Shown: piece by piece, positions 3,643-43,775 of the stretch
Position numbering within the stretch: the stretch's first letter is position 1
How the letters are laid out: each line of letters starts with the position of its first letter
Assembly: GCF_011386835.1 (NCBI RefSeq)
Contig: NC_088803.1
Span: 11,284,001 to 11,348,000, forward strand
Source of the DNA: Chrysemys picta bellii
Lineage: Eukaryota
Reading direction: 5' to 3'
DNA length: 64,000 nt
Program-made: the position numbers and the translations under genes
Notes under the pieces: generated by a model
What the model was told of the DNA's origin: nothing
Seen by the model: the letters and a program-made list of their open reading frames with translations, nothing else
Database searches by the model: none

Positions 3643-5198
<1,556 letters not shown>

Positions 5199-5342
5199 CC
5201 AACGCCCCTTGCCCCTGGAGTGATTGCAGGTTTTCCAGGAGGACCTGGAGTCTCTACAGCTCCTGTTGGGCTTTGAGCCCCACCACCCTCTTCTAGCCTT
5301 CCCCCTCCTCGGGCGGGGCGGGAGGAAGGGAAGAGGTGGATA

Positions 5343-5348
5343 AATAAA
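5343..5348 (+). terminator. EMC4 polyadenylation signal (proximal); second AATAAA at 5565-5570
   Basis: AATAAA 145 nt after the stop, followed by GT-rich sequence. Confidence 0.7.
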
Positions 5349-5479
5349 GCTGCTGTGCAGAGGTGCCTCCACTGCCTGCTGTGGGGGGTGGGAGGCAGAG
5401 TACACGCAAAAAGCACAATCTGAATCTTCCCTTCCATGTGCAAGTTCCAGCCCCCACAGCTACACTTAATGTATAAAAT

Positions 5480-5485
5480 TTTATT
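5480..5485 (-). terminator. SLC12A6 polyadenylation signal
   Basis: TTTATT on + (AATAAA on -), about 880 nt after the stop at 6365. Confidence 0.7.
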
Positions 5486-6364
5486 CTTTACACATTTCTG
5501 GTACAGAGCAAAAAAAAAATCCCTTCTTCCCCCCCCCAATACTGTAAACTGGGGCTTGACCCCCAATAAATTAAAAGCCCCCCTCTCCCCAAAGATCAAG
5601 TAGTAGGTGCCAGGCCCTGCCTTCCAATTGAAGCTATAGGGGGAGAGGAGATTGGATTTGCCTGTTTCAAGACTGCCCTGGGGGTCAGTGGCTCCAGAAA
5701 CCGCTTGTCCAGCCTGCCATGATTAGTGCTGAGACAACAGCAGCCAGGGGGAGGGAAGGGGGAAACTTATGTCCCTACCCTCTCATGATCCAGCAACCCC
5801 ACCCCCCAAGCAGCCCTATGGCTATGGGGCAGGAGTGAATGTGAAATAAAAAGTTAAGCCACAAGTGTGATGAGTTGGTGGTTTCTTCTGGTTCTCAACC
5901 CCACTCTGGCCCCTGCAAGGGGCATCCCAGCCATTAGGCCTAGGAAGTTGGATCAGTGACTGGCACTGGCCTGCCCTGCCCCGAACAGGCCCCATTACAG
6001 CAACCATGCTGATTGCACCCAAAAGGGGGGGAGAAGGGAGGAGGCCCACAACCCCCCTGCACCCTTCCACAGCAGCTGAAAAGGGAAAGGAAGCAAAGCA
6101 GCTTTGGCACTGCGTGGTGACGGGCATCATGGGAAATCTCTCCCATCCCTGCTTTGTGAGGGTTGCCCCATGGTGACCCGGCCCTGTTGGGTCTAATACC
6201 ACAGTCCCTTTGGTGCCACCCCCTTTCTTGCCCTGTAGGAGTAGAGAGGTGGGGTAACTGCTGCATGGAGGTGTGCCCTTGGTGAATTTTGGCATGCCTC
6301 TTCCCCCCAGCCTGTCTAGAGGGCAGCAGTGGAATGAAGTGGCAGAGGCCAGTGGAGGGGCACT

Positions 6365-33620: not shown

Positions 33621-34214
33621 CTTTCTGAGCTTCTAACCTCCCTGCTCCCAGTACAGCTCGTGTCCCACCCCCATGACCTAAACCAGGGTGGGCAAACTTT
33701 TTGGCCGAGGGCCACATCGGGGAATAGAAATAGATTTGTGGGCCATGAATGCTCTCAAAATTGGGGTTGGGATGCGGGCACTGGGGTGAGGCTGGGGCTG
33801 AGGAATTTGGGGTGTAGGAGGGTGCTCTGGGCTGGGACTGAGGGGTTTGGAGGGTGGGAGGGGGATCAGAGCTGGGGAAAGGGTGCAGGTTCCGGATGGG
33901 GGTGTGGGCTCTGGGGTGGGGCTGGGGATCAGTGGTTTGAGGTGCTCCGGGCTGGGATCGAGGGGTTTGGAGAGTGGGAGGGGGATCAGGGCTGGGACAG
34001 GGGGTTGAGGCATGGGGAGAGGCTCAAGGGTGCAGGCTCAGAGGGGCACTTACCTCAAGCGGCTCCCGGAAGCAGTGGCATGTCCCTTCCCCAGCTCCTA
34101 CATGGAGACATGGCCAGGCAGCTATGCATGCTGCCCCCTCTGCAGGTGCCGCCCCTGCAGCTTCCATTGGAGCACGTAGGAGCCAGAACGGGACCATGCC
34201 ATGGCTTCTGGGAG

Positions 34215-35544: not shown

Positions 35545-35737
35545 TCTGGGAGCCACGTGGTGCAGCCCTCAACCCTGTGCCCCAGTTGGAGCACCAAGGG
35601 GGGCCGAGCCTCATGGTGCGGCCCCCAATCCAGCGTCCCGGCAGGAGTGGGGCCGAGCTGCGTGGTGAGGGTCACTGGACCGGCTTAAAATGGCTCGTGG
35701 GCCATAGTTTGCCCACCTCTGACCTAAACCATTCGCT

Positions 35738-36145
35738 CATAGGCGCCGACTCCGGGGCTGGAGCATCCACAGGGGAAAATTGGTGGGTGATCTGCACTCA
35801 CCGACAGCTCCCTGCCCTGCCTCCCCGCCCCAGCTCACCTCCGCCTCCTCCCCTGTGCATGCGTTGTGCCTGCTTTCCCCCCCTGTGCCCAGCGCTTGCG
35901 CCACAAAACAACTGTTTTGCATGGCAAGCGCTGGGAGGGAGGGGGGAGTAGGGGGAATGCAGTGTGCTCAGGGGAGGAGGCTGGGGCAGGGATTTGGGGA
36001 AGGGGTCCAATAGGGGCAGGGAGGGGGCGGAGTTAGGGTGGGGGCTTTGGGGAAGGGGTTGGAATGGGGGCAGGGCAGGGAAAGGGTGGAGTCGGAGTGT
36101 GGGGGCGCTAGCACCCACCGGCGCTGGGGAAAGTTGGCGCCTATG
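35738..36145. mobile_element. hAT-like MITE
   Basis: TIR CATAGGCGCCGACT / AGTTGGCGCCTATG; degenerate TSD CATTCGCT / CATTTACC. Confidence 0.7.
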
Positions 36146-36369: not shown

Positions 36370-37600
36370 TGTGAATGATTGAAGGATTAGAAACATGCCT
36401 TAGAATGAAAGACTCAGTGAGCTCAAGCTATTTAGCTCAACAAGAGAAGGTAAAGGGGGGACTCGATTACATTGTACCTATAAGGGGAACAAATATTTAA
36501 TGGTGATCTCAAAGGTCTAACAGGATCCAATGGCTGGAAGTTGGAACTAGACAAATTCAGACTGGAAAGAAGGCGTAAATTAACAGTGAGAGTAATTAAC
36601 CACCGGAATGACTACCACGGGTCATGGTGGAATCTCCATCGCTGGCGACTTTTAATTCAAGTTGGGATGTTTTTCTAAAAGATCCGCTCTAGGAATTATT
36701 TGGGGGACGTTCTCTGGCCCATGCTATACAAGGGGTGTTCAGAAAGTTTCTGGCCTTACAAATCAAAAACAATCCAATTTGCATTCTGTTGTTTATTTAT
36801 TTTTATTATAATTCCCCTTGACACCAATGCACGGGCCCATCTTGGAGAAGTACTTGCCATGCATGGCCGAAATGCCTCCACTGCTGCAACCACCTCTTTA
36901 TTGCATTTGAAACTCAACCCGCAAAGGTCCTCCTTCAATCTGGGGAACAGGTGGACATCTAAGGGAGCCAGATCTGCTGGAGAGGCTGGACGGGAAGCAG
37001 TTGAAAGCCACATTAGCTAGCTGTGGCCACTGGGACGTCTAAGGTGACACATTGTCTTGGAGAACCAAAAAGCTCCAGAGTATTCCTGGAAACGCCACAT
37101 CGTGCTCTCACGTTCGGGGCACCTGCCTTGTTGACCCTTTTCTTGTGCCCGAGTCTTCAGTTAACTATGCACCTGACTGTTGATCTTCTTTCCTTCTGGT
37201 ATAGTGGCATCTCTGGGACGTCCTGACCTTGGCTCATCCTCTGTGCTGATCCGCCCTTGCTTAAATTCAGCAGCCCCATTGTTTACAGTGGCACCATCTC
37301 CCAGCATCCCCCCCACCCCCACCCCATTCTCATGGATGTCCTGTGCATTCAAGCCGTTCTTATGCAGGTACTAGCTCCCTACTAAACTTTCAGTCTTCTC
37401 CATTTTTAGATCTTTGGTGACTGACTCCCTGAATGTTCTGCACAGGCAAAAAACTGCCTTCTAGCAAAGAGATGCATCAAAGTGTCAGCACCTTGGTCTG
37501 TGAAATCTGTTGGGCCCCAGCGTGTCCTTAAATAGGTCCGACTGGACCTTTTCTGAGTTACCCTAATACAGATCATCACAATGGTTCCTTATGGCCTGGG
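36370..37600 (+). mobile_element. CR1 LINE 3' end, split by a mariner insertion
   Basis: CR1-like ...GACAAATTCAGACTGGAA...AGGAATTATTTGGGG...GGCCCATGCTA[insert]TACAGATCATCACAATGGTTCCTTATGGCC. Confidence 0.7.
36729..37566 (-). mobile_element. Decayed, internally deleted Tc1/mariner (mariner-type) transposon
   Basis: - strand MEKTE...YLHKNGLNAQDIHE from ATG 37403, ISTEDEPRSGRP, and DLAPLDVHLFPRLKEDLCG (SPDLAPSD-like); TA dinucleotides at 36727-36728 and 37567-37568; degenerate TIRs. Confidence 0.8.
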
Positions 37601-37942
37601 TATGAGCAAAAGTCATGTCCATGCGGCTCCTTTCCTTAGTATCAGGGGCCACACTGAAAGCCTGGCAGCTGGGTACAGTTTTTTGCGGGGTGTCCTGGTT
37701 TCTCTAATGTTTACCCCAAAGCCACAGGAGCAAACCAGGGGACGATGAGTCGGGATTGAGGGGCACCGGAACAGCTGGGGGATGGGGAACCCAGGTCTGG
37801 TAGGAGGGGGCTGCGGGTCAGGATTGAGGGGCAGTGGCAGAGCTGGGGAAAGAGAACCTTAGGATCAGGCTCTGAATGTCCCCCCCCCATCAGAACTCCC
37901 GACGTCTCCAGGTTCCAGATTTGTTTTGATTCAACCTGGCAG

Positions 37943-40900
37943 CTGGGGGGCGAGGGTGGGGGGTGGTGCCAGGGCCAGATTGGGGCGTGAGTTTCCCAGC
38001 AGCCCTTGTTCTTCGGCGGGTGCTGCCGATACCCTCTGCAGAGAACGGCCTCCCCTTTCCCTCCCCGCTCATGCTCTCCAACCTTCTCACCCCTCCTTGC
38101 CATGACCTCCCAGCCCCGCCAGGGCCCCCTGCTGCCTCCTCTCCTGCTGCCTACCTTCCCTGGTGCTGCCCTGCTCCTGACCTCACCCGACGTCCCCGGG
38201 GGCAAGCTCATTGTCAAGCTGAAGCCGGAGGGGGCCCAGGAGCCGCCCCGGGCACAGACCATCATCCTAACGGGGGCGCCGGCGGGCTGGCCCCCCACGC
38301 GGCGGGACGGGGCCCCTGTCCGGCTCCAGCTGGCCGCCGGGATAAGGACCGTCCTGCTGAGCAAAGCCAGTGAGGAACCAGGGCCCAGGGAAACCCCTCC
38401 AGCCCGGGCACCCCCCACCAGCGACCCCTCCGCCTCCTGCACCTCCAAGGGTGTCTACGAAAACTATCGGCGCTGGCAGTGCTACAAAGCCCTGGCTAGG
38501 CAGCACTTCCCGGGCACGCCCGACGCCGAGGCGCTGGCCTGCTTCTTCATGTGAGAGCCTGGAGAGACTCCGGCTGGGACAGCAGGGGGCTGCAGTTGGG
38601 AGTGAGGGGCACTGGCACAGCTGGAGTGGGGGGGAATCCCAGGGCTGGGCTAGTAGGGGACTGCAGGTCGGGAGTGAGGGGCATCGGAAGAGCTGCAGGG
38701 GAAGCCCAGGGCGGGGCTAGCAGGGGGCTGCGGGTTGGGAGTGTGGAGCTCCCTCCGGCGCTGACCCAGGCTCCCCCACAGCCCCGTCTTGCGGTCGCTG
38801 ACCCGCCTGCGCCCCGAGCTGGCTCTGGAGGAGGGGGTGCCACGTGCCGTGCAGGAATGGGAGCGCAGCAGCAACTTCGAGCGCATGATCTTCTACGAGA
38901 TGGCTGAGAAGTGAGTGTTGCCCCGTGGGGCTGGCCCTGGGCATCCTGCCGCCCAAGTACTGCGCTGGAGATCCTGGGGATGTCGCCCCCGCTCTAAGCC
39001 CAACCCTCCTCCTCTTCCTCAGGTTCATGGAGTTCGAGGCTGAAGAGGAGCTGCAGATCCAGAAAATGAAGCTCCTGAGTAGCTCCCAATTCCAGCCCCC
39101 ACCCACCGACCCTCCCAAGCTTTCCGGCCCGCCAGCCCTCGATGTTGGCCAGCAGCAAGGTACCTTCCTCCTAAACCCCCACAATACCCTGGGGTGGAGG
39201 GAAACCCCTTCACAGGTGACAGGAGATAGTCACTGACTGACTGCAGGGTTCCCCCCACATACCCTGATTATTATTATTTTTTGCACAAGCCTTTCACTTT
39301 GGCATGGTTTTTGCACACACCCAGCACCTTTGGCTTTTGCACATACCTAGAATGTTTGCACGTGCAGAGCACCTGTGCACAGTTTTTTGCATGTACCTAG
39401 CAACTTGGCCTGGGTTATTTTGTGCATACCCAGCACTTTTGCATGATTTTTGCACGTGCCTAGAACTTCCTCTCTTTTTTGCACATACCCAGCATTTTTG
39501 CAGTTTTTGTATGTAACTAGACTTTTGCACACTCCCAGCAGTTTTGTACTTTTCCAATACCTAGAACCTTTGCACATACCCAGCACTTATGCATCTAAAA
39601 TCTTTGCATGTTTTGCACATACCCTTTTGCCCAGTTTTTGCACATACCTAGAACCTTTGCACCTTTTACAGTACCTAGAACCTTTGCACTTTTCACATCT
39701 ACCTAGAATAGGGGTGGGCAAACTTTTTGGCCTGAGGGCCACATTGGGGTTCTGAAACTGTACGGAGGGCTGGGTAGGGAAGGCTGTGCCTCCCCAAACA
39801 GCCTGGCCCCTGCCCCCTATCTGCCCCCTCCCACTTCCTACCCCCTGATTGCCCCCCTCAGAACCCCTGAACGATCCAGTCCCCTCGCTCCTTGTCCCCT
39901 GACTGCCCCCTCCCGGGAACCCCCGCCCCTAACCACCCTCCCCCTGGGATCCCATTTCCTATCCAACCCCACCTGCTTCCTGTCTCCTTACTCCCCCGAT
40001 CCCTAGCCACACCCTCGCCCCCTGACAGGCCCCCCAGGACTCCCACGCCTATCCATCTGTCCCCTGCTCCCTGTCCCCTGACGACCCCTCGAACCTCCGC
40101 CCCATCCAACCACCCCTTGCTACCTGTCCCCTGACTGCCCCCCGGGACCTCCTGCTCCTTATCCAACCACCCCGCTCCCCGCCCCCTTACCATGCCGCTC
40201 AGAGCACCAGGACTGGCAGCTGCGCCGCCCAGCTGCAGCCAGCCACGCCGCCGCGCTGCCTGACAGGAGCTCGTAGCCCCGCCACCCAGAGCGCTGGCGG
40301 CACGGGGAGCTGAGGCTGCAGGGGTGGAGGGACAGCAGGGGAGGGACCAGGGACTAGTCTCCCTGTCTGGGAGCTCAAGGGCCGGGCAGGATGGGCCCGC
40401 GGGCCGTAGTTTCCCCACCTCTGACCTAGAAGCTTTGCAGTTTTTGCACATACCCAGCGTGTTTGCCCAGTTTTTACACATACTTAGAACCTTTCTACAT
40501 TTTTGCATGTACCTAGAACTTTACACAGTTCTTGCACATACCCAGCACTTTTGCATGGGTTTTTTTTTTTTTGCATGGACCTAGAACCTTTGCATGGTTT
40601 TTTTTTTGTTCATACCCAGCACTTTTGCAGTTTTGCACATACTTAGAACATTTGCATATATCCAGCACTTTCGCACAGGATATTTTTGCACAGACCCAGA
40701 ACCTTTGTACATTTTTTCCCTACTAACCTGGTGCCATTGAGTGTTCTTTTTGGCTGGGTGGAGGTCACTGGCAACGTTACATCCCTCCACCAGGGGGCAT
40801 TGGGTGCTGAGTGGAGGATCCCAAGGACTCTGGGTGCTGGGTGGGTGGTCCATGGTGGTGCTGGGTGGGGGCATCCCTGGGGATACAGGGTGCTCGGTCA

Positions 40901-43775
40901 CTGGGTGGGGTTCCTGAGTGGACATCCCCACAGTCCCTGCATGGCGCTCTCCCTTTCCCTGGCAGTATACATCCCCAAAAAGGCGGCATCCAAGGGGCGC
41001 CAGCCCAGGCGCCGTCAGCGCCACCTGCCTGGCCCGGTGGCCCCAGGGGAGCCACGGGAGATCCCGCCTGAGGCCGTGCGGCAGTACACTGAGATCATGG
41101 AGGGGCTGCGGCCCAGCTCGGAGGAGGAGGCTGGCGGGTGCGGCGAGCCCCAGAGCCAGGCACAGGGGACACTCCCAGACCCCGCACTACTGCAGTACGT
41201 TGAGCAGCTCTGTGAGGATGAGAGCTTCGTCTGCAAGGTGAGTGTCTCCCGCGGGGGGGTGCCACATCCCACCCATGGGGCCCTCAGCTCCCAGCATCCA
41301 GGGGGCAAAGACTGGGACGGGGATGGGACCCAAGTGTCCAGGATGGCAGGGCAGGGCCGCATAGCTCCCAGCCCCTGTGGGTAGAGAGCAGGATAGGGAT
41401 GGGACCCAGGTGTCCAGGATGGTAGTGCCAGGTGCTCACCCTCAAGGTGCCCCATATTCCCCAGCCCACATGGGGAAAGACCAGGAGAGGAGATGGAACC
41501 CAGGTGTCCAGGTCGGCAGTGTAAGGTGCTCATCCCAAGGAGGACCCATAGCTCCCAACCCGCGGGGGAGGGGGAGACCAGGACAGGAGATGGGACCCAG
41601 GCATCCAGGTTGGCAGCACCGCACCAGGGCCTCGCTCTCACCCCGCTTCCCCCGCCCCTTGGCCCGGCAGGTGGAAGCCGTGATCCACCCCCAGTTCCTG
41701 GCCCAGCTGCTCTCTCCAGAGAAGAGATGCGACCCCCTGGATCTCAGCGAGGAGCTGGAGCAAGAGCTGGGACTCACCCCAAGCCAGGTACCACCCCACA
41801 CGGCCACTGAGGGGGAGCTAGACCCAAGGAGAGTAGTTGTCTCTCTGCCCCCTTTACACAGAAACCACCCCCCACAGTGACCGCCTTTCCTCTCTCCCCA
41901 CAGCTGGTTGAGAAACGTCTCCTAGCCCTCTCGGAGGACGAGCTCAGCCCCCTGGCGTGCCCAGCCCCCCATTCGGACTCCACCCCCTCCCAGTCCGAAG
42001 AGGAGGATGAAGGCAGCAGCCAAAAGGGACCGGCCAGCCGTCAGCAGGCCATGAGCGGAGCCTCACCCCCCAGGGGCAGCGGGGCCAAGGGCAGGGCTCT
42101 GGGGGCAGAGCAACCAGAGGTGCCAACCCCCACACCTGTGCGGCCATCGCAGCCACGCCAATGGCAGCCAGGAGATGCAGCAGCTCCAAGATGTCTGTCC
42201 CCTCGCAAATGTGGCAGTGAAGGGAGACTATTAGCCTCACTGAGGAGTCGAGTTGAGAGGGTGTCCCAGCAGCCTCAGGGGCAGGGCCAGGATGGAGGCC
42301 GAAGGGAAGGATCAGCAGTTACCCTGGGCACAATACAACCTGGCAGCCAGGCCTGGAGTGTCAGATCACAAGGGGACAATTTGGTAGGACCGGCAAACCA
42401 TGCGTCAACTCCCAGCGGGTACAGAAAACAAGATGGTGGCCAAGAAGGGAAGGTCAAAAGTCAATCTGAAGCCAATGCTGATGGGGAAGGACTAAGAGAT
42501 GCCCCAATGGGAACAAAGTGTTGTTGCCAAGGAGACAACCTGGTGGAAGCTGGAGCTCTAGAGTCAGGTCTCAATGGACATGGACAACAAGATGGCTGCC
42601 AAGGAGAGACGGTCAAAGGCCAACCCCAGGCTGGATGGGAACCACTGGGAGACATCCCAAGTGCCACAGGCCAAGCCAATATCGTGAGGTCACACAGGGA
42701 CAACCTGGTGGAACAAAGAGCTCTAGAGTCAACTTTCAATGGACATGGAAAACAAGAAGGTGGCCTAGAAGGGAAGGTTAGAGGTCAAAACAAGGAGGAG
42801 GCTGATTGGAGTGAAGCCACCCTGAGAGAGCATGATCTCCAGCCTGGGAGCATGAAGTTGAGTGGGAACAACCTGAAAAGAGAAGGAAGCCCAGCGTCAA
42901 CTCCCACTAGGCCTGGAGAACAAGATGGCAGTCAAGCAGATCAACCAACCAAACTGGAGTCTAGGGTGGGTGGTGGCCACCCTACAGTGTTACTACTCAG
43001 CAGGGCCAATGGGCAGCCCTTAAGCCTCTTTGCTCGCCCTCTGGGTGCTGACGGGCGAGGGGAGGGTGAATTGCCACCAGTGTCCAACGTTCAAGGCCAA
43101 CGTCCTGACCCACCTCCCCTTGGCCTGAGTGGCCTGAAGGGACCTACTCAGGCCCGGGCAGCTTTAGAGGCTGACTCCAGTTGCCGAGCAGAGCCAGAAT
43201 GGAGATTTGCAATAGAGATGGGGTCAAGACAGCCCCACTTCCTAGATGGTGGCAACAGTGAAGGCAATGGAGTCAGAACCATGGCCGGACCTGGAGATCC
43301 AGAACAATGTGAGGCAGGAGCTACCAGGGGCTGTGGCAATGGGACCAGTTCAAGGGATGATGGAAAGGAGGCGGGAGAGGCCAGTTCAGCCATGGGTGAT
43401 GGCCCTTCCAAGATGGCCACAATTGCCAGCTCAGAATTTCCCCCGGAGGGCATGGAGGATGCTGGGAAACATGATGATGATGAGGAAGATGATGAAGAAC
43501 TGTCCATTTTTTCCTCTCTGCTGGCATCAAAACTCCATCTCTCCAGTCCCGAGGGACCTGTTGGCTCTGTCCCTGCCCTGAGGGACCAAGTGGGGCCCCA
43601 CAGCAGAGCCCTCTCCCCGACTTGGGAGACAGTGAGATGGGATCCCATGAGGAGACGCTCCACACGGCTGTGCCCAGATGGGTCACATGCCATGGACACT
43701 GGCGTTCGGCTCAGCCATAAGAGGAGGAGCAACAATATGGCCGCCAGGAGGAGCAAGCGCCTGCGCAGCCAATGA
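37943..43775 (+). CDS. NUTM1: NUT family member 1 (NUT midline carcinoma protein homolog); 5' start uncertain, >=991 aa from ATG 38102
   Basis: Exons 37943(or 38042/38102)-38550, 38782-38910, 39023-39159, 40966-41237, 41671-41787, 41904-43775, all GT-AG and in frame from 38102. Motifs [35 protein letters not shown]...[88 protein letters not shown] and terminal RRSKRLRSQ match recalled NUT. See the finding on the frame break at 37987-38130. Confidence 0.9.
39278..40715. repeat. Intronic satellite, ~20-nt alternating subunits (CATACCTAGAA / CATACCCAGCA + TTTTGCA), split by a MITE
   Basis: Tracts at 39278-39708 and 40432-40715. Confidence 0.85.
39709..40423. mobile_element. hAT MITE (same family as 33684-35721)
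   Basis: TIR TAGGGGTGGGCAAAC / GTTTCCCCACCTCTG; perfect TSD ACCTAGAA at 39701-39708 and 40424-40431. Confidence 0.9.

What the first reader, a model, noticed from the sequence alone, without database searches (positions are those of the whole stretch)
37943..38130. NUTM1 N-terminal exon changes frame, and a 55-nt GT-AG mini-intron would repair it exactly
Seen: from the phase-1 acceptor at 37942 one frame reads ...[22 protein letters not shown], which aligns ungapped to recalled human LPGPDMSMKPSAALSPSPALPF. All later NUT homology ([23 protein letters not shown]) is in the +1 frame. A strong donor GC|GTGAGT (37987) and acceptor CTCTGCAG (38041) enclose 55 nt whose removal joins the two frames. 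Alternatives: a 1-nt insertion (removing one T at 38097-38098 gives TPPAMTSQ), or initiation at gccATGa 38102. Inference: either intronization of former coding sequence rescuing a frameshift with an ultra-short intron, a truncated N-terminus, or an assembly error.
Basis: partly seen in the sequence, partly recalled or inferred. Interest (0 to 1): 0.7.

Follow-up and report, generated by a model that had tools for sequence, protein, structure and literature searches.

The report
NUTM1 leader, not a frameshift
The apparent change of reading frame in the painted turtle's NUTM1 gene lies in non-coding DNA just upstream of the real start codon, a start that turtles share with lizards and snakes. 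No frameshift, assembly slip or 55-base mini-intron is needed, and the finding is ordinary.

Summary

The interpretation does not hold.
- The window is Chrysemys picta bellii. Its RefSeq NUTM1 isoform X4 starts at ATG 38102 (149/149 identical).
- The same MTSQ start opens the full-length RefSeq/GenBank NUTM1 models of other hard-shelled turtles and most squamate models. It is an old reptile start, not a turtle truncation.
- Across eight turtle genomes, every gap downstream of the ATG is a multiple of 3, and substitutions pile up at third codon positions.
- In 37943-38101, gaps are 4, 3, 8, 10, 26, 51, 13, 1 and 61 nt, and substitutions show no periodicity. The stretch is not coding.
- The mini-intron's GT is missing in Caretta, Pelodiscus, Emydura and python. 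In Mauremys the "repair" ends out of frame at a stop.
- Six independent hard-shelled turtle assemblies carry the same TT before the ATG (only the three emydids match in leader length), so it is not an assembly slip.
- The likeness of frame A to the mammalian N-terminus is marginal (p about 0.04-0.1).

The parts
37204..37367 (+). Upstream exon used by annotated turtle NUTM1 models; its 5' limit is unknown. It holds ATG 37336 (MSCAFKPFLC) and the donor TGCAG|GTACTAG after 37367, which is phase 2 relative to that ATG.
   Evidence: RefSeq Chrysemys isoforms X1-X3, Mauremys P0159 and Platysternon P0153 start MSCAFKPFLC / MSYAFKPFLC joined to exon 3. Gopherus evgoodei P0152 maps to 37204-37320. The donor is conserved in Emydidae, Mauremys and Caretta, lost in Macrochelys, and similar to the python TGCAG|GTAGAAC.
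37480..37601 (+). Conserved block homologous to the first exon of the NCBI Emydura model. It holds ATG 37581 (acaATGg) followed by CTGG|GTATGAG, a hypothetical phase-1 donor.
   Evidence: 82% identity to L001:5977-6026. The ATG and GTATGAG are present in Malaclemys, Emys and Macrochelys and absent in Emydura. An old sea-turtle model, P0146, starts MVPSGL here. There is no transcript evidence.
37908..37942 (+).
   Evidence: The core GTTxT[GC]ATT[CT][AG]ACC occurs once per reptile locus, on the + strand, 106-206 nt upstream of the ATG, and is absent from the bat locus. The AG is present in six durocryptodires and absent in Pelodiscus (CAC) and Emydura (ACG). The Ensembl Gopherus model P0151 begins right after it.
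37943..38101 (+). Non-coding leader of NUTM1 (5' UTR and/or the end of intron 1).
   Evidence: Gaps against other turtles are 4; 3; 8, 10; 26, 3, 51; 13, 1, 61 nt. Substitutions are flat over the three positions (30/41/36). There is no Pfam or HMM hit in any frame.
37987..38041 (+). The proposed 55-nt GT-AG piece. It contains the conserved block CNE2 (37987-38012).
   Evidence: The GT..AG signals and the 55-nt length are confirmed. The donor is GTGACT in Mauremys, TTTGAGT in Caretta, GGGAGT in Pelodiscus, GCAAGT in Emydura and ATGAAT in python. The CNE2 core is unique in each reptile locus, 52-131 nt upstream of the ATG.
38102..38550 (+). Coding part of exon 2, from the start codon (MTSQPRQ...) to the donor AT|GTGAGA.
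   Evidence: 149/149 identical to RefSeq Chrysemys picta bellii NUTM1 X4 residues 1-149. Pfam NUT matches at 6.7e-21. All gaps among 8 turtles are multiples of 3, and substitutions by codon position are 60/33/132.
38782..38912 (+). Exon 3 ([12 protein letters not shown]...FYEMAEK). Its end is approximate.
   Evidence: Pfam NUT matches at 6.3e-22. The acceptor cacag|C joins AT+C = Ile, as in all the models.
41890..43775 (+). Large last exon of NUTM1, including the stop codon. Its start is approximate.
   Evidence: Identical to P0156 from QLVEKR to the C-terminus.

Best explanation
The window holds the 5' end of painted-turtle NUTM1. Translation starts at ATG 38102 (MTSQPRQ...). The 159 nt between the AG at 37942 and that ATG are non-coding, either 5' leader of exon 2 or the last part of intron 1.

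The 'frame change' appears only if the longer mammalian N-terminus is forced onto this leader. Reptile NUTM1 does not have that extension. Its start codon and first four codons (ATG ACC TCC CAG) are shared by turtles and snakes. The GT at 37987 and the AG at 38041 are not a conserved intron pair. The AG at 38041/38043 may be an ordinary acceptor for a far-upstream exon.

Shown: the annotated start, its conservation, the lack of coding constraint upstream, the loss of the splice signals in relatives, and agreement between independent assemblies.

Inferred: that no 55-nt splice occurs in Chrysemys itself, since no reads could be examined.
For: 1. Exon 2 from 38102 is 149/149 identical to RefSeq Chrysemys picta bellii NUTM1 isoform X4, residue 1 = ATG 38102.

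2. The same MTSQ start is used in the full-length RefSeq/GenBank models of many other turtles. These are Malaclemys, Trachemys, Emys, Terrapene, two Mauremys species, Chelonoidis, Chelydra, Macrochelys, Caretta, two Lepidochelys species, Natator and Eretmochelys. A few Ensembl and superseded models read the 5' end differently.

3. Most squamate models listed begin M(T/A/S)SQ..PGP..SLLLPAFPG. They come from gecko, cordylid, lacertid, agamid, phrynosomatid, python, rattlesnake, cobra and corn snake. Exceptions are Phrynocephalus (MAHTPGP), Pogona (MTST) and Ophiophagus (an upstream extension). Python DNA reads ggatcATGACCTCCCAG and turtle DNA ttgccATGACCTCCCAG. A purine sits at -3 in all of them.

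4. Downstream of the ATG, all 8 gaps among 8 turtles are multiples of 3, and substitutions by codon position are 60/33/132. In the leader, 7 of 10 gaps are not multiples of 3, and substitutions are 30/41/36.

5. Entering at the 37943-equivalent in phase 1 and removing the 55 nt leaves Mauremys out of frame with a stop. Caretta keeps the frame but has TTTGAGT in place of GTGAGT. Pelodiscus, Emydura and python have no GT there, and Emydura lacks the acceptor region altogether.

6. The only upstream exon backed by several annotations (donor after 37367) is phase 2 relative to its ATG. From that ATG the 55-nt removal would not reach the NUT frame (my frame arithmetic).

7. In snakes the homologues of both conserved blocks lie inside intron 1. 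The Thamnophis model P0128 and the python DNA show the donor TGCAG|GTAGAAC and the acceptor cctatag|GATCATG four nt before the ATG.

8. The frame-A likeness to mammals is marginal.
Against:
- The signals are good in Emydidae and Macrochelys (GTGAGT ... CTCTGCAG).
- The 55-nt block has no indels in six durocryptodires.
- In Macrochelys an 8-nt and a 10-nt deletion on either side sum to 18, so the spliced frame would be kept there. By chance that has odds of about 1 in 3.
- A candidate upstream ATG with a phase-1 GTATGAG donor exists at 37581-37601.
- The Ensembl model of Gopherus evgoodei (P0151) also reads frame A (APGPDWNVSFPAALALWQVLPTPS) before jumping to the NUT frame.
Confidence: 0.82

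Rival explanations
1. One reading: a real 55-nt ultra-short intron (37987-38041) is spliced out in emydid turtles. It joins an N-terminal extension started in an upstream exon (for example ATG 37581 with the donor after 37601) to the NUT frame.
For: - GTGAGT and CTCTGCAG are present, and the 55-nt removal restores the frame.
- The spliced frame is also kept in Macrochelys through compensating 8- and 10-nt deletions, and by length in Caretta.
- A phase-1 ATG exon candidate exists.
- Introns of 37-65 nt do exist in humans (PMC4463651).
Against: - The donor GT is lost in Caretta, absent in Pelodiscus, Emydura and python, and weakened in Mauremys.
- Mauremys ends out of frame at a stop.
- The two flanking pieces take non-3n indels and show no codon periodicity. 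In Macrochelys most of the supposed extension would be read in another frame, so no amino-acid sequence is conserved.
- No gene model found here, from NCBI or Ensembl pipelines in more than 12 turtle species, contains this intron.
- The annotated upstream exon has the wrong phase.
- Ultra-short introns are very rare: only 22 conserved candidates in the human genome.
- The nearest branch-point-like A is about 12 nt from the AG (sequence inspection).
Confidence: 0.04
2. The leader is a decayed relic of an ancestral amniote N-terminal coding region (mammalian ..LPGPDMTMKPGAAL..). In the reptile stem lineage a frame change moved initiation to the downstream MTSQ codon. This concerns origin only and is compatible with the best explanation.
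For: - The likeness is colinear and in the expected place. The local score is 48, reached by 44/1000 shuffles.
- MAFFT aligns the reptile PGPGPPSCPP with the mammalian PGPPDQPPW, which places the reptile Met downstream of the mammalian one.
- The distance from the AG at 37942 to PLLLPTFPG is about 195 nt, against 163 nt in the bat from the exon 2 acceptor to PLVLSAFP.
- Python has an ATG (ATGAATTTCCCAG) where turtles have GTGAGTTTCCCAG, and CCAGAT precedes it in both.
- The Pfam NUT profile starts at the bat's MTMK.
Against: - 34/350 GC-rich control pieces score as well.
- The placental N-terminus HMM and Pfam give no hit.
- Turtle-bat and python-bat DNA alignments are at chance level.
- PGPD is deleted in Pelodiscus and is not in a constant frame among turtles.
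- An equally good alternative alignment pairs reptile MTSQ..PGP..PP.C with marsupial MTPKPGPVPPC.
- Neutral DNA should not keep protein-level likeness for roughly 300 million years. That divergence age is my own background knowledge, not a tool result.
Confidence: 0.15
3. A 1-nt insertion (for example one T at 38097-38098) or an assembly error broke a once-continuous ORF in this genome.
For: Removing one T gives TPPAMTSQ (sequence).
Against: - CCTCCTTGCCATGAC is identical in six independent assemblies: Chrysemys, Malaclemys, Emys, Mauremys, Caretta and Macrochelys.
- The three emydids have no length difference anywhere in 37943-38130.
- Squamates share the start codon.
Confidence: 0.01
4. Some turtle NUTM1 transcripts begin translation in the upstream exon (ATG 37336, MSCAFKPFLC) and enter exon 2 through the AG at 38042-38043. 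That gives [34 protein letters not shown].., an in-frame 31-residue extension. The reader's 'mini-intron acceptor' region would then be an ordinary intron-1 acceptor.
For: - Phase 2 from the donor after 37367, plus exon 2 starting at 38044, is in frame. 38044-38550 is 507 nt, which equals 169 codons (my arithmetic).
- The Ensembl Chrysemys model P0161 enters exon 2 exactly there (..L|TASPFPP).
- CTCTGCAGAGA is conserved in six durocryptodires.
- In Thamnophis the upstream exon is likewise joined in frame 4 nt before the ATG.
Against: - RefSeq X4 starts at MTSQ, which it would not if its transcript carried an in-frame upstream ATG.
- Macrochelys has a 10-nt deletion in 38042-38101 and has lost the upstream exon and its donor.
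- No reads were available.
Confidence: 0.12

Closest known systems
RefSeq NUTM1 isoform X4 of Chrysemys picta bellii (XP_042701776.2, P0156)
   Same: Its exon 2 coding sequence is identical to the window from ATG 38102 (149/149), and its last exon is identical too.
   Different: Nothing differs in the coding part. The record seen here is the protein only, so its 5' UTR structure could not be read.
Squamate NUTM1 (for example Liasis olivaceus P0025, Gekko P0021, Podarcis P0024)
   Same: The same start, M(T/A/S)SQ, followed by SLLLPAFPGAALLVTS..KLIIKLK. ATGACCTCCCAG is identical in python and turtles. The two upstream conserved blocks are shared.
   Different: Squamates have about 8 more residues between the Met and LLLPAFPG. 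In snakes the intron 1 acceptor lies 4 nt before the ATG, so the homologue of the turtle 'leader' is intronic there.
Mammalian NUTM1 N-terminus (placental MASDG|ASPLPGPDMTMKPGAALSPF..; marsupial MTPKPGPVPPC..)
   Same: From PLVLSAFPS / KVIVKVK onward it is clearly orthologous to the turtle frame B.
   Different: Placentals start in a tiny exon 1 (bat ATG ACT TCA GAT GGA G|GTAAGT, phase 1) and carry about 45-60 extra N-terminal residues. Turtles show only a marginal likeness to these in frame A.
Human ultra-short introns of 65 nt or less (Shimada et al. 2015, PMC4463651; 56-nt HNRNPH1 intron, PMC8363638)
   Same: The length of 55 nt is within the reported 37-65 nt range, with GT-AG ends.
   Different: The reported cases were selected for conserved length and sequence among related species and were backed by transcripts. 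Here the splice sites and the frame are not conserved and no transcript evidence exists. The piece is not G-rich (A6 C18 G16 T15).
Automatic gene models that bridge a frame problem with a small gap-intron (Ensembl Gopherus evgoodei NUTM1, P0151)
   Same: That model reads the same frame A (APGPDWNVSFPAALALWQVLPTPS) and then jumps into the NUT frame. An annotation pipeline met the same 'frame change'.
   Different: It is 5'-partial with no start codon.

Membership tests
NUT family (Pfam PF12881) / NUTM1 orthologue | Significant match to the NUT profile, and orthology by synteny. | tested here: met
   Exon 2 frame B matches at 6.7e-21 and exon 3 at 6.3e-22. NOP10 lies upstream and an acyltransferase gene (LPCAT4-like) downstream in every fetched locus. 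Identical to RefSeq NUTM1 X4.
Spliceosomal ultra-short intron | GT...AG ends with a usable length. | tested here: met
   GTGAGT at 37987 and CAG ending at 38041, 55 nt apart.
Spliceosomal ultra-short intron | Splice sites and length conserved among related species. | tested here: not met
   The donor GT is absent in Caretta, Pelodiscus, Emydura and python, and is GTGACT in Mauremys. The acceptor is CAAAG in Pelodiscus and deleted in Emydura.
Spliceosomal ultra-short intron | Its removal keeps an open reading frame across species, and the flanking exon parts evolve as coding sequence. | tested here: not met
   Mauremys ends out of frame with a stop. The flanks take 4-, 8- and 10-nt indels and show no third-position excess.
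Spliceosomal ultra-short intron | Spliced form present in transcripts. | not testable with these tools
The short database products found were unspliced genomic calls from squamates and mammals.
Frameshifted coding exon / assembly indel | The two frames both carry significant homology, and the indel is private to one assembly. | tested here: not met
   The frame-A homology is marginal. The same sequence and length are found in independent assemblies.
Non-coding 5' leader or intron upstream of a conserved start codon | Indels not restricted to multiples of 3, no codon periodicity, and a start codon conserved in relatives. | tested here: met
   7/10 gaps are not multiples of 3, and substitutions are 30/41/36 by position. 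ATGACCTCCCAG is shared by turtles and python.

The most novel reading that the evidence does not exclude
The reptile NUTM1 leader may be a fossil of the ancestral amniote N-terminal coding sequence. On this reading a frame change in the reptile stem lineage moved initiation about 40-50 codons downstream to MTSQ. Two pieces of the old exon (CNE1 at 37908-37942, CNE2 at 37987-38012) were then kept for about 270 million years for a new, non-coding role, such as splicing or a testis-specific control element. Python still has an ATG at the CNE2 position. The divergence time is my own background knowledge, not a tool result.
Probability: 0.12. Interest if true: 0.35.

Novelty: not a real feature. 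Interest (0 to 1): 0.1.

Why it matters
If the mini-intron were real, it would be a rare vertebrate case of former coding sequence turning into an ultra-short intron that rescues a frameshift. The evidence says it is not real. The practical value is negative but useful:
- The RefSeq start of turtle NUTM1 is sound.
- Reptile NUT lacks the N-terminal extension of about 45-60 residues found in mammals.
- Gene models that read frame A (for example Ensembl Gopherus evgoodei) are probably artefacts of projecting mammalian proteins onto GC-rich, proline-coding-looking DNA.

The two upstream blocks conserved between turtles and snakes are a small lead for anyone studying spermatid-specific control of NUTM1.

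Tried and rejected
Read laying was never called. After the first one I still translated 38006-38551 for one protein word search and for Pfam. I say so for transparency.

2. Spliced turtle transcripts among short database products. Only unspliced genomic calls from squamates and mammals came back.

3. HMM of 29 placental N-termini against all six frames of the window. Frame A was not reported.

4. Pfam on the short frame-A and frame-B pieces gave nothing either way. The NUT profile starts at bat residue 14.

5. DNA alignment of the turtle leader, and of the python upstream region, to the bat exon 2 start was at chance level.

Hemicordylus and Natator products were not on record.

7. My first idea was that frame-A 'PLMLS' matched the mammalian PLMLSAFP. 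The multi-clade alignment rejects this.

8. A possible uORF reading of the leader: in frame C, substitutions run 20/12/27. These comparisons are not independent, the pattern is not significant, and non-3n indels contradict it.

9. Paper searches found no study of reptile NUTM1 5' structure.

The joined readings were only printed locally, with X for the split first codon.
Full report
**What is in the sequence.**
- An AG ends at 37942.
- From there one frame (A) reads [56 protein letters not shown].
- The +1 frame (B) reads ..[41 protein letters not shown] up to the donor AT|GTGAGA at 38550/38551.
- Frame B matches Pfam NUT at 6.7e-21. Frame A matches nothing.
- GC|GTGAGT starts at 37987 and CTCTGCAG ends at 38041. 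The 55 nt between them would join frame A to frame B.

**Whose gene it is.** The window is Chrysemys picta bellii.
- Exon 2 from ATG 38102 is 149/149 identical to residues 1-149 of RefSeq NUTM1 isoform X4.
- The last exon is identical too.
- NOP10 lies upstream and an acyltransferase gene lies downstream, as in every orthologous locus I fetched.

**The start codon is old.** The full-length RefSeq/GenBank NUTM1 models of other hard-shelled turtles begin MTSQP... These include Malaclemys, Trachemys, Emys, Terrapene, Mauremys, Chelonoidis, Chelydra, Macrochelys and five sea turtles.

A few models read the 5' end differently:
- Ensembl models for Chrysemys (P0002, P0161), Gopherus (P0011, P0151, P0152) and Pelusios (P0015).
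- A superseded RefSeq Chrysemys model (P0160).
- An old sea-turtle model (P0146).
- The exon-2-skipping isoforms.

Most squamate models listed also begin M(T/A/S)SQ, followed by PGP..SLLLPAFPGAALLVTS. Exceptions are Phrynocephalus (MAHTPGP), Pogona (MTST) and Ophiophagus (an upstream extension). At the DNA level python reads ggatcATGACCTCCCAG and turtles ttgccATGACCTCCCAG. So initiation at 38102 is not a turtle truncation. It is the shared start of turtles and lepidosaurs.

Mammals differ. Placentals start in a tiny exon 1 (bat ATG ACT TCA GAT GGA G|GTAAGT) and carry MASDG-ASPLPGPDMTMKPGAAL... Marsupial models start MTPKPGPVPPC. In a multi-clade alignment the mammalian PLVLSAFPS pairs with the reptile (S/P)LLLP(A/T)FPG of frame B. 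The frame-A 'PLMLS' is therefore a coincidence.

**Is the stretch upstream of the ATG coding?** I fetched the orthologous DNA of seven more turtles: Malaclemys, Emys, Mauremys, Caretta, Macrochelys, Pelodiscus and Emydura. I aligned it with the window.
- From the ATG to the exon 2 donor, all eight gaps are multiples of 3 (9; 9; 18, 9; 6, 3, 9, 3). Substitutions fall 60/33/132 on codon positions 1/2/3.
- In 37943-38101 the gaps are 4; 3; 8, 10; 26, 3, 51; 13, 1, 61. Seven of the ten are not multiples of 3. Substitutions are flat (30/41/36).
- The PGPD piece is deleted in Pelodiscus. It is not in a constant frame relative to the upstream AG in Mauremys or Macrochelys.

This is how non-coding DNA evolves.

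**The 55-nt piece.** One search gives the table.
- The donor is GTGAGT in the three emydids and in Macrochelys.
- It is GTGACT in Mauremys, TTTGAGT in Caretta, GGGAGT in Pelodiscus and GCAAGT in Emydura. Python has ATGAAT.
- The acceptor CAG is kept in the six durocryptodires, is CAAAG in Pelodiscus, and is deleted in Emydura.
- Entering in phase 1 and removing the 55 nt gives an open frame into MTSQ in Emydidae, in Caretta (which lacks the GT) and in Macrochelys.
- Macrochelys keeps the frame only because an 8-nt and a 10-nt deletion add up to 18. Most of the supposed extension is then read in another frame.
- In Mauremys the result is out of frame and hits a stop.

The only upstream exon supported by several annotations has its donor after 37367. 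It is used by RefSeq X1-X3, Mauremys and Platysternon models that start MSCAFKPFLC, and it is homologous to the exon 1 of Gopherus P0152. A phase-1 candidate exists (ATG 37581, CTGG|GTATGAG) but rests on sequence alone.

Introns of 65 nt or less are very rare in vertebrates. Those accepted in humans were selected for conserved length and sequence among close relatives, and 15 of the 22 candidates gained splicing evidence (PMC4463651). This one fails the conservation test.

The three emydid assemblies have no length difference in 37943-38130. All six durocryptodires read CCTCCTTGCCATGAC.

**Is frame A a relic of the mammalian N-terminus?** The evidence is weak.
- The 22-mer scores 33 (9/22 identical) against a placental consensus. 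It ranks fifth of 66,492 positions in the window.
- The best local score of the leader is 48. Shuffles give 35.1 +/- 6.3, and 44/1000 reach 48. So do 34 of 350 GC-rich control pieces.
- A placental N-terminus HMM, Pfam, and turtle-bat DNA alignment all give nothing.

Some features keep the idea alive:
- The likeness is colinear and in the expected place.
- Spacing to the LLLPxFPG motif is similar in turtle and bat.
- MAFFT puts the reptile Met downstream of the mammalian one.
- Python has an ATG where turtles have the GTG of GTGAGT.

I give it about 0.12-0.15. It concerns origin only and does not change the present-day reading.

**What the upstream DNA may be.** Two short blocks are conserved between turtles and python.
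- CNE1 is 37908-37942 and CNE2 is 37987-38012.
- Each core is unique in every reptile locus, on the + strand. CNE1 lies 106-206 nt and CNE2 52-131 nt before the ATG.
- Neither core occurs in the bat locus.

In snakes both blocks lie inside intron 1. The Thamnophis model, with python DNA, shows the donor TGCAG|GTAGAAC and the acceptor cctatag|GATCATG four nt before the ATG.

In turtles the acceptor used is unknown. Annotators have chosen several, mostly in other species:
- the equivalent of 37943 (Gopherus P0151);
- 38043|38044 (Ensembl Chrysemys P0161);
- the equivalent of 38113|38114 (Gopherus P0152);
- ATGAG| in Emydura (NCBI P0009).

So part or all of 37943-38101 may be intron rather than 5' UTR. 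Either way it is non-coding.

**Limits.** No human sequence was used.

**Verdict.** The frameshifted exon and the mini-intron are not real features. The gene starts where RefSeq says it does. Interest is low.

Noticed in passing
window 37336-37367 joined to 38782: RefSeq Chrysemys isoforms X1-X3, a Mauremys mutica model and a Platysternon model start MSCAFKPFLC (or MSYAFKPFLC) in an upstream exon and join it straight to exon 3. They skip exon 2 and so lack the first ~150 residues of NUT. Exon 1 and exon 3 are both phase 2, so the skip is in frame.
   Followed up: partly
window 37336-38105: If the upstream exon (donor after 37367) joins 37943 or 38042, the MSCAFKPFLC reading frame runs in frame C to TGA 38103-38105. 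That stop overlaps the main start as ATGA, a layout known from termination-reinitiation. The 60 nt before the ATG have no indels in Emydidae, Mauremys and Caretta, but Macrochelys breaks the pattern. This may be coincidence.
   Followed up: partly
window 37908-37942 and 37987-38012; L005:5775-5815 and 5868-5895: Two short non-coding blocks upstream of the NUTM1 start are conserved between turtles and a python. They are unique in each locus and colinear, and neither core occurs in the bat locus. Their function is unknown; an intronic splicing signal or a testis-specific control element are possibilities. TTCCCAGAA in python and Macrochelys fits the TTCnnnGAA (GAS) pattern, which I recall from memory.
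   Followed up: partly
L003:5960-6010 (Pelodiscus): In the softshell turtle the ancestral start position reads GTG. A 1-nt insertion puts that position out of frame, and a new ATG 21 nt downstream (MSAPPPPLLLP) serves as the annotated start. The first ~7 codons of reptile NUT therefore appear to be dispensable.
   Followed up: partly
L001:6001-6073 and ~7047 (Emydura): The NCBI Emydura model is 5'-partial. It joins an upstream exon (homologous to window 37480-37601) to an acceptor ATGAG|C that cuts through the conserved start codon. The open frame begins right after a stop and has no Met. It is either a model artefact or a pleurodire-specific 5' structure.
   Followed up: partly
L006:3540-3612 and 4566-5742 (Macrochelys): The alligator snapping turtle has lost most of the upstream exon (window 37189-37356 is absent), and its donor GT is AT. 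Its intron upstream of exon 2 holds 17.3 copies of a 68-nt GC-rich unit that is present about 1.5 times in the window (37736-37848).
   Followed up: partly
window 38572-38743: Intron 2 of NUTM1 holds 2.5 copies of a 67-nt GC-rich minisatellite related to the unit in intron 1. It is the same kind of repeat that earlier notes of this scan describe in other GC-rich introns of this genome.
   Followed up: partly
window 35613-35855 and 34110-34175: Ensembl Chrysemys models (P0002, P0161) and a superseded RefSeq model (P0160) put further NUTM1 first exons here, inside or next to the region another first-stage note calls a hAT stack with CpG-island-like cargo. The 5' end of this gene has been modelled in at least five different ways.
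   Followed up: no
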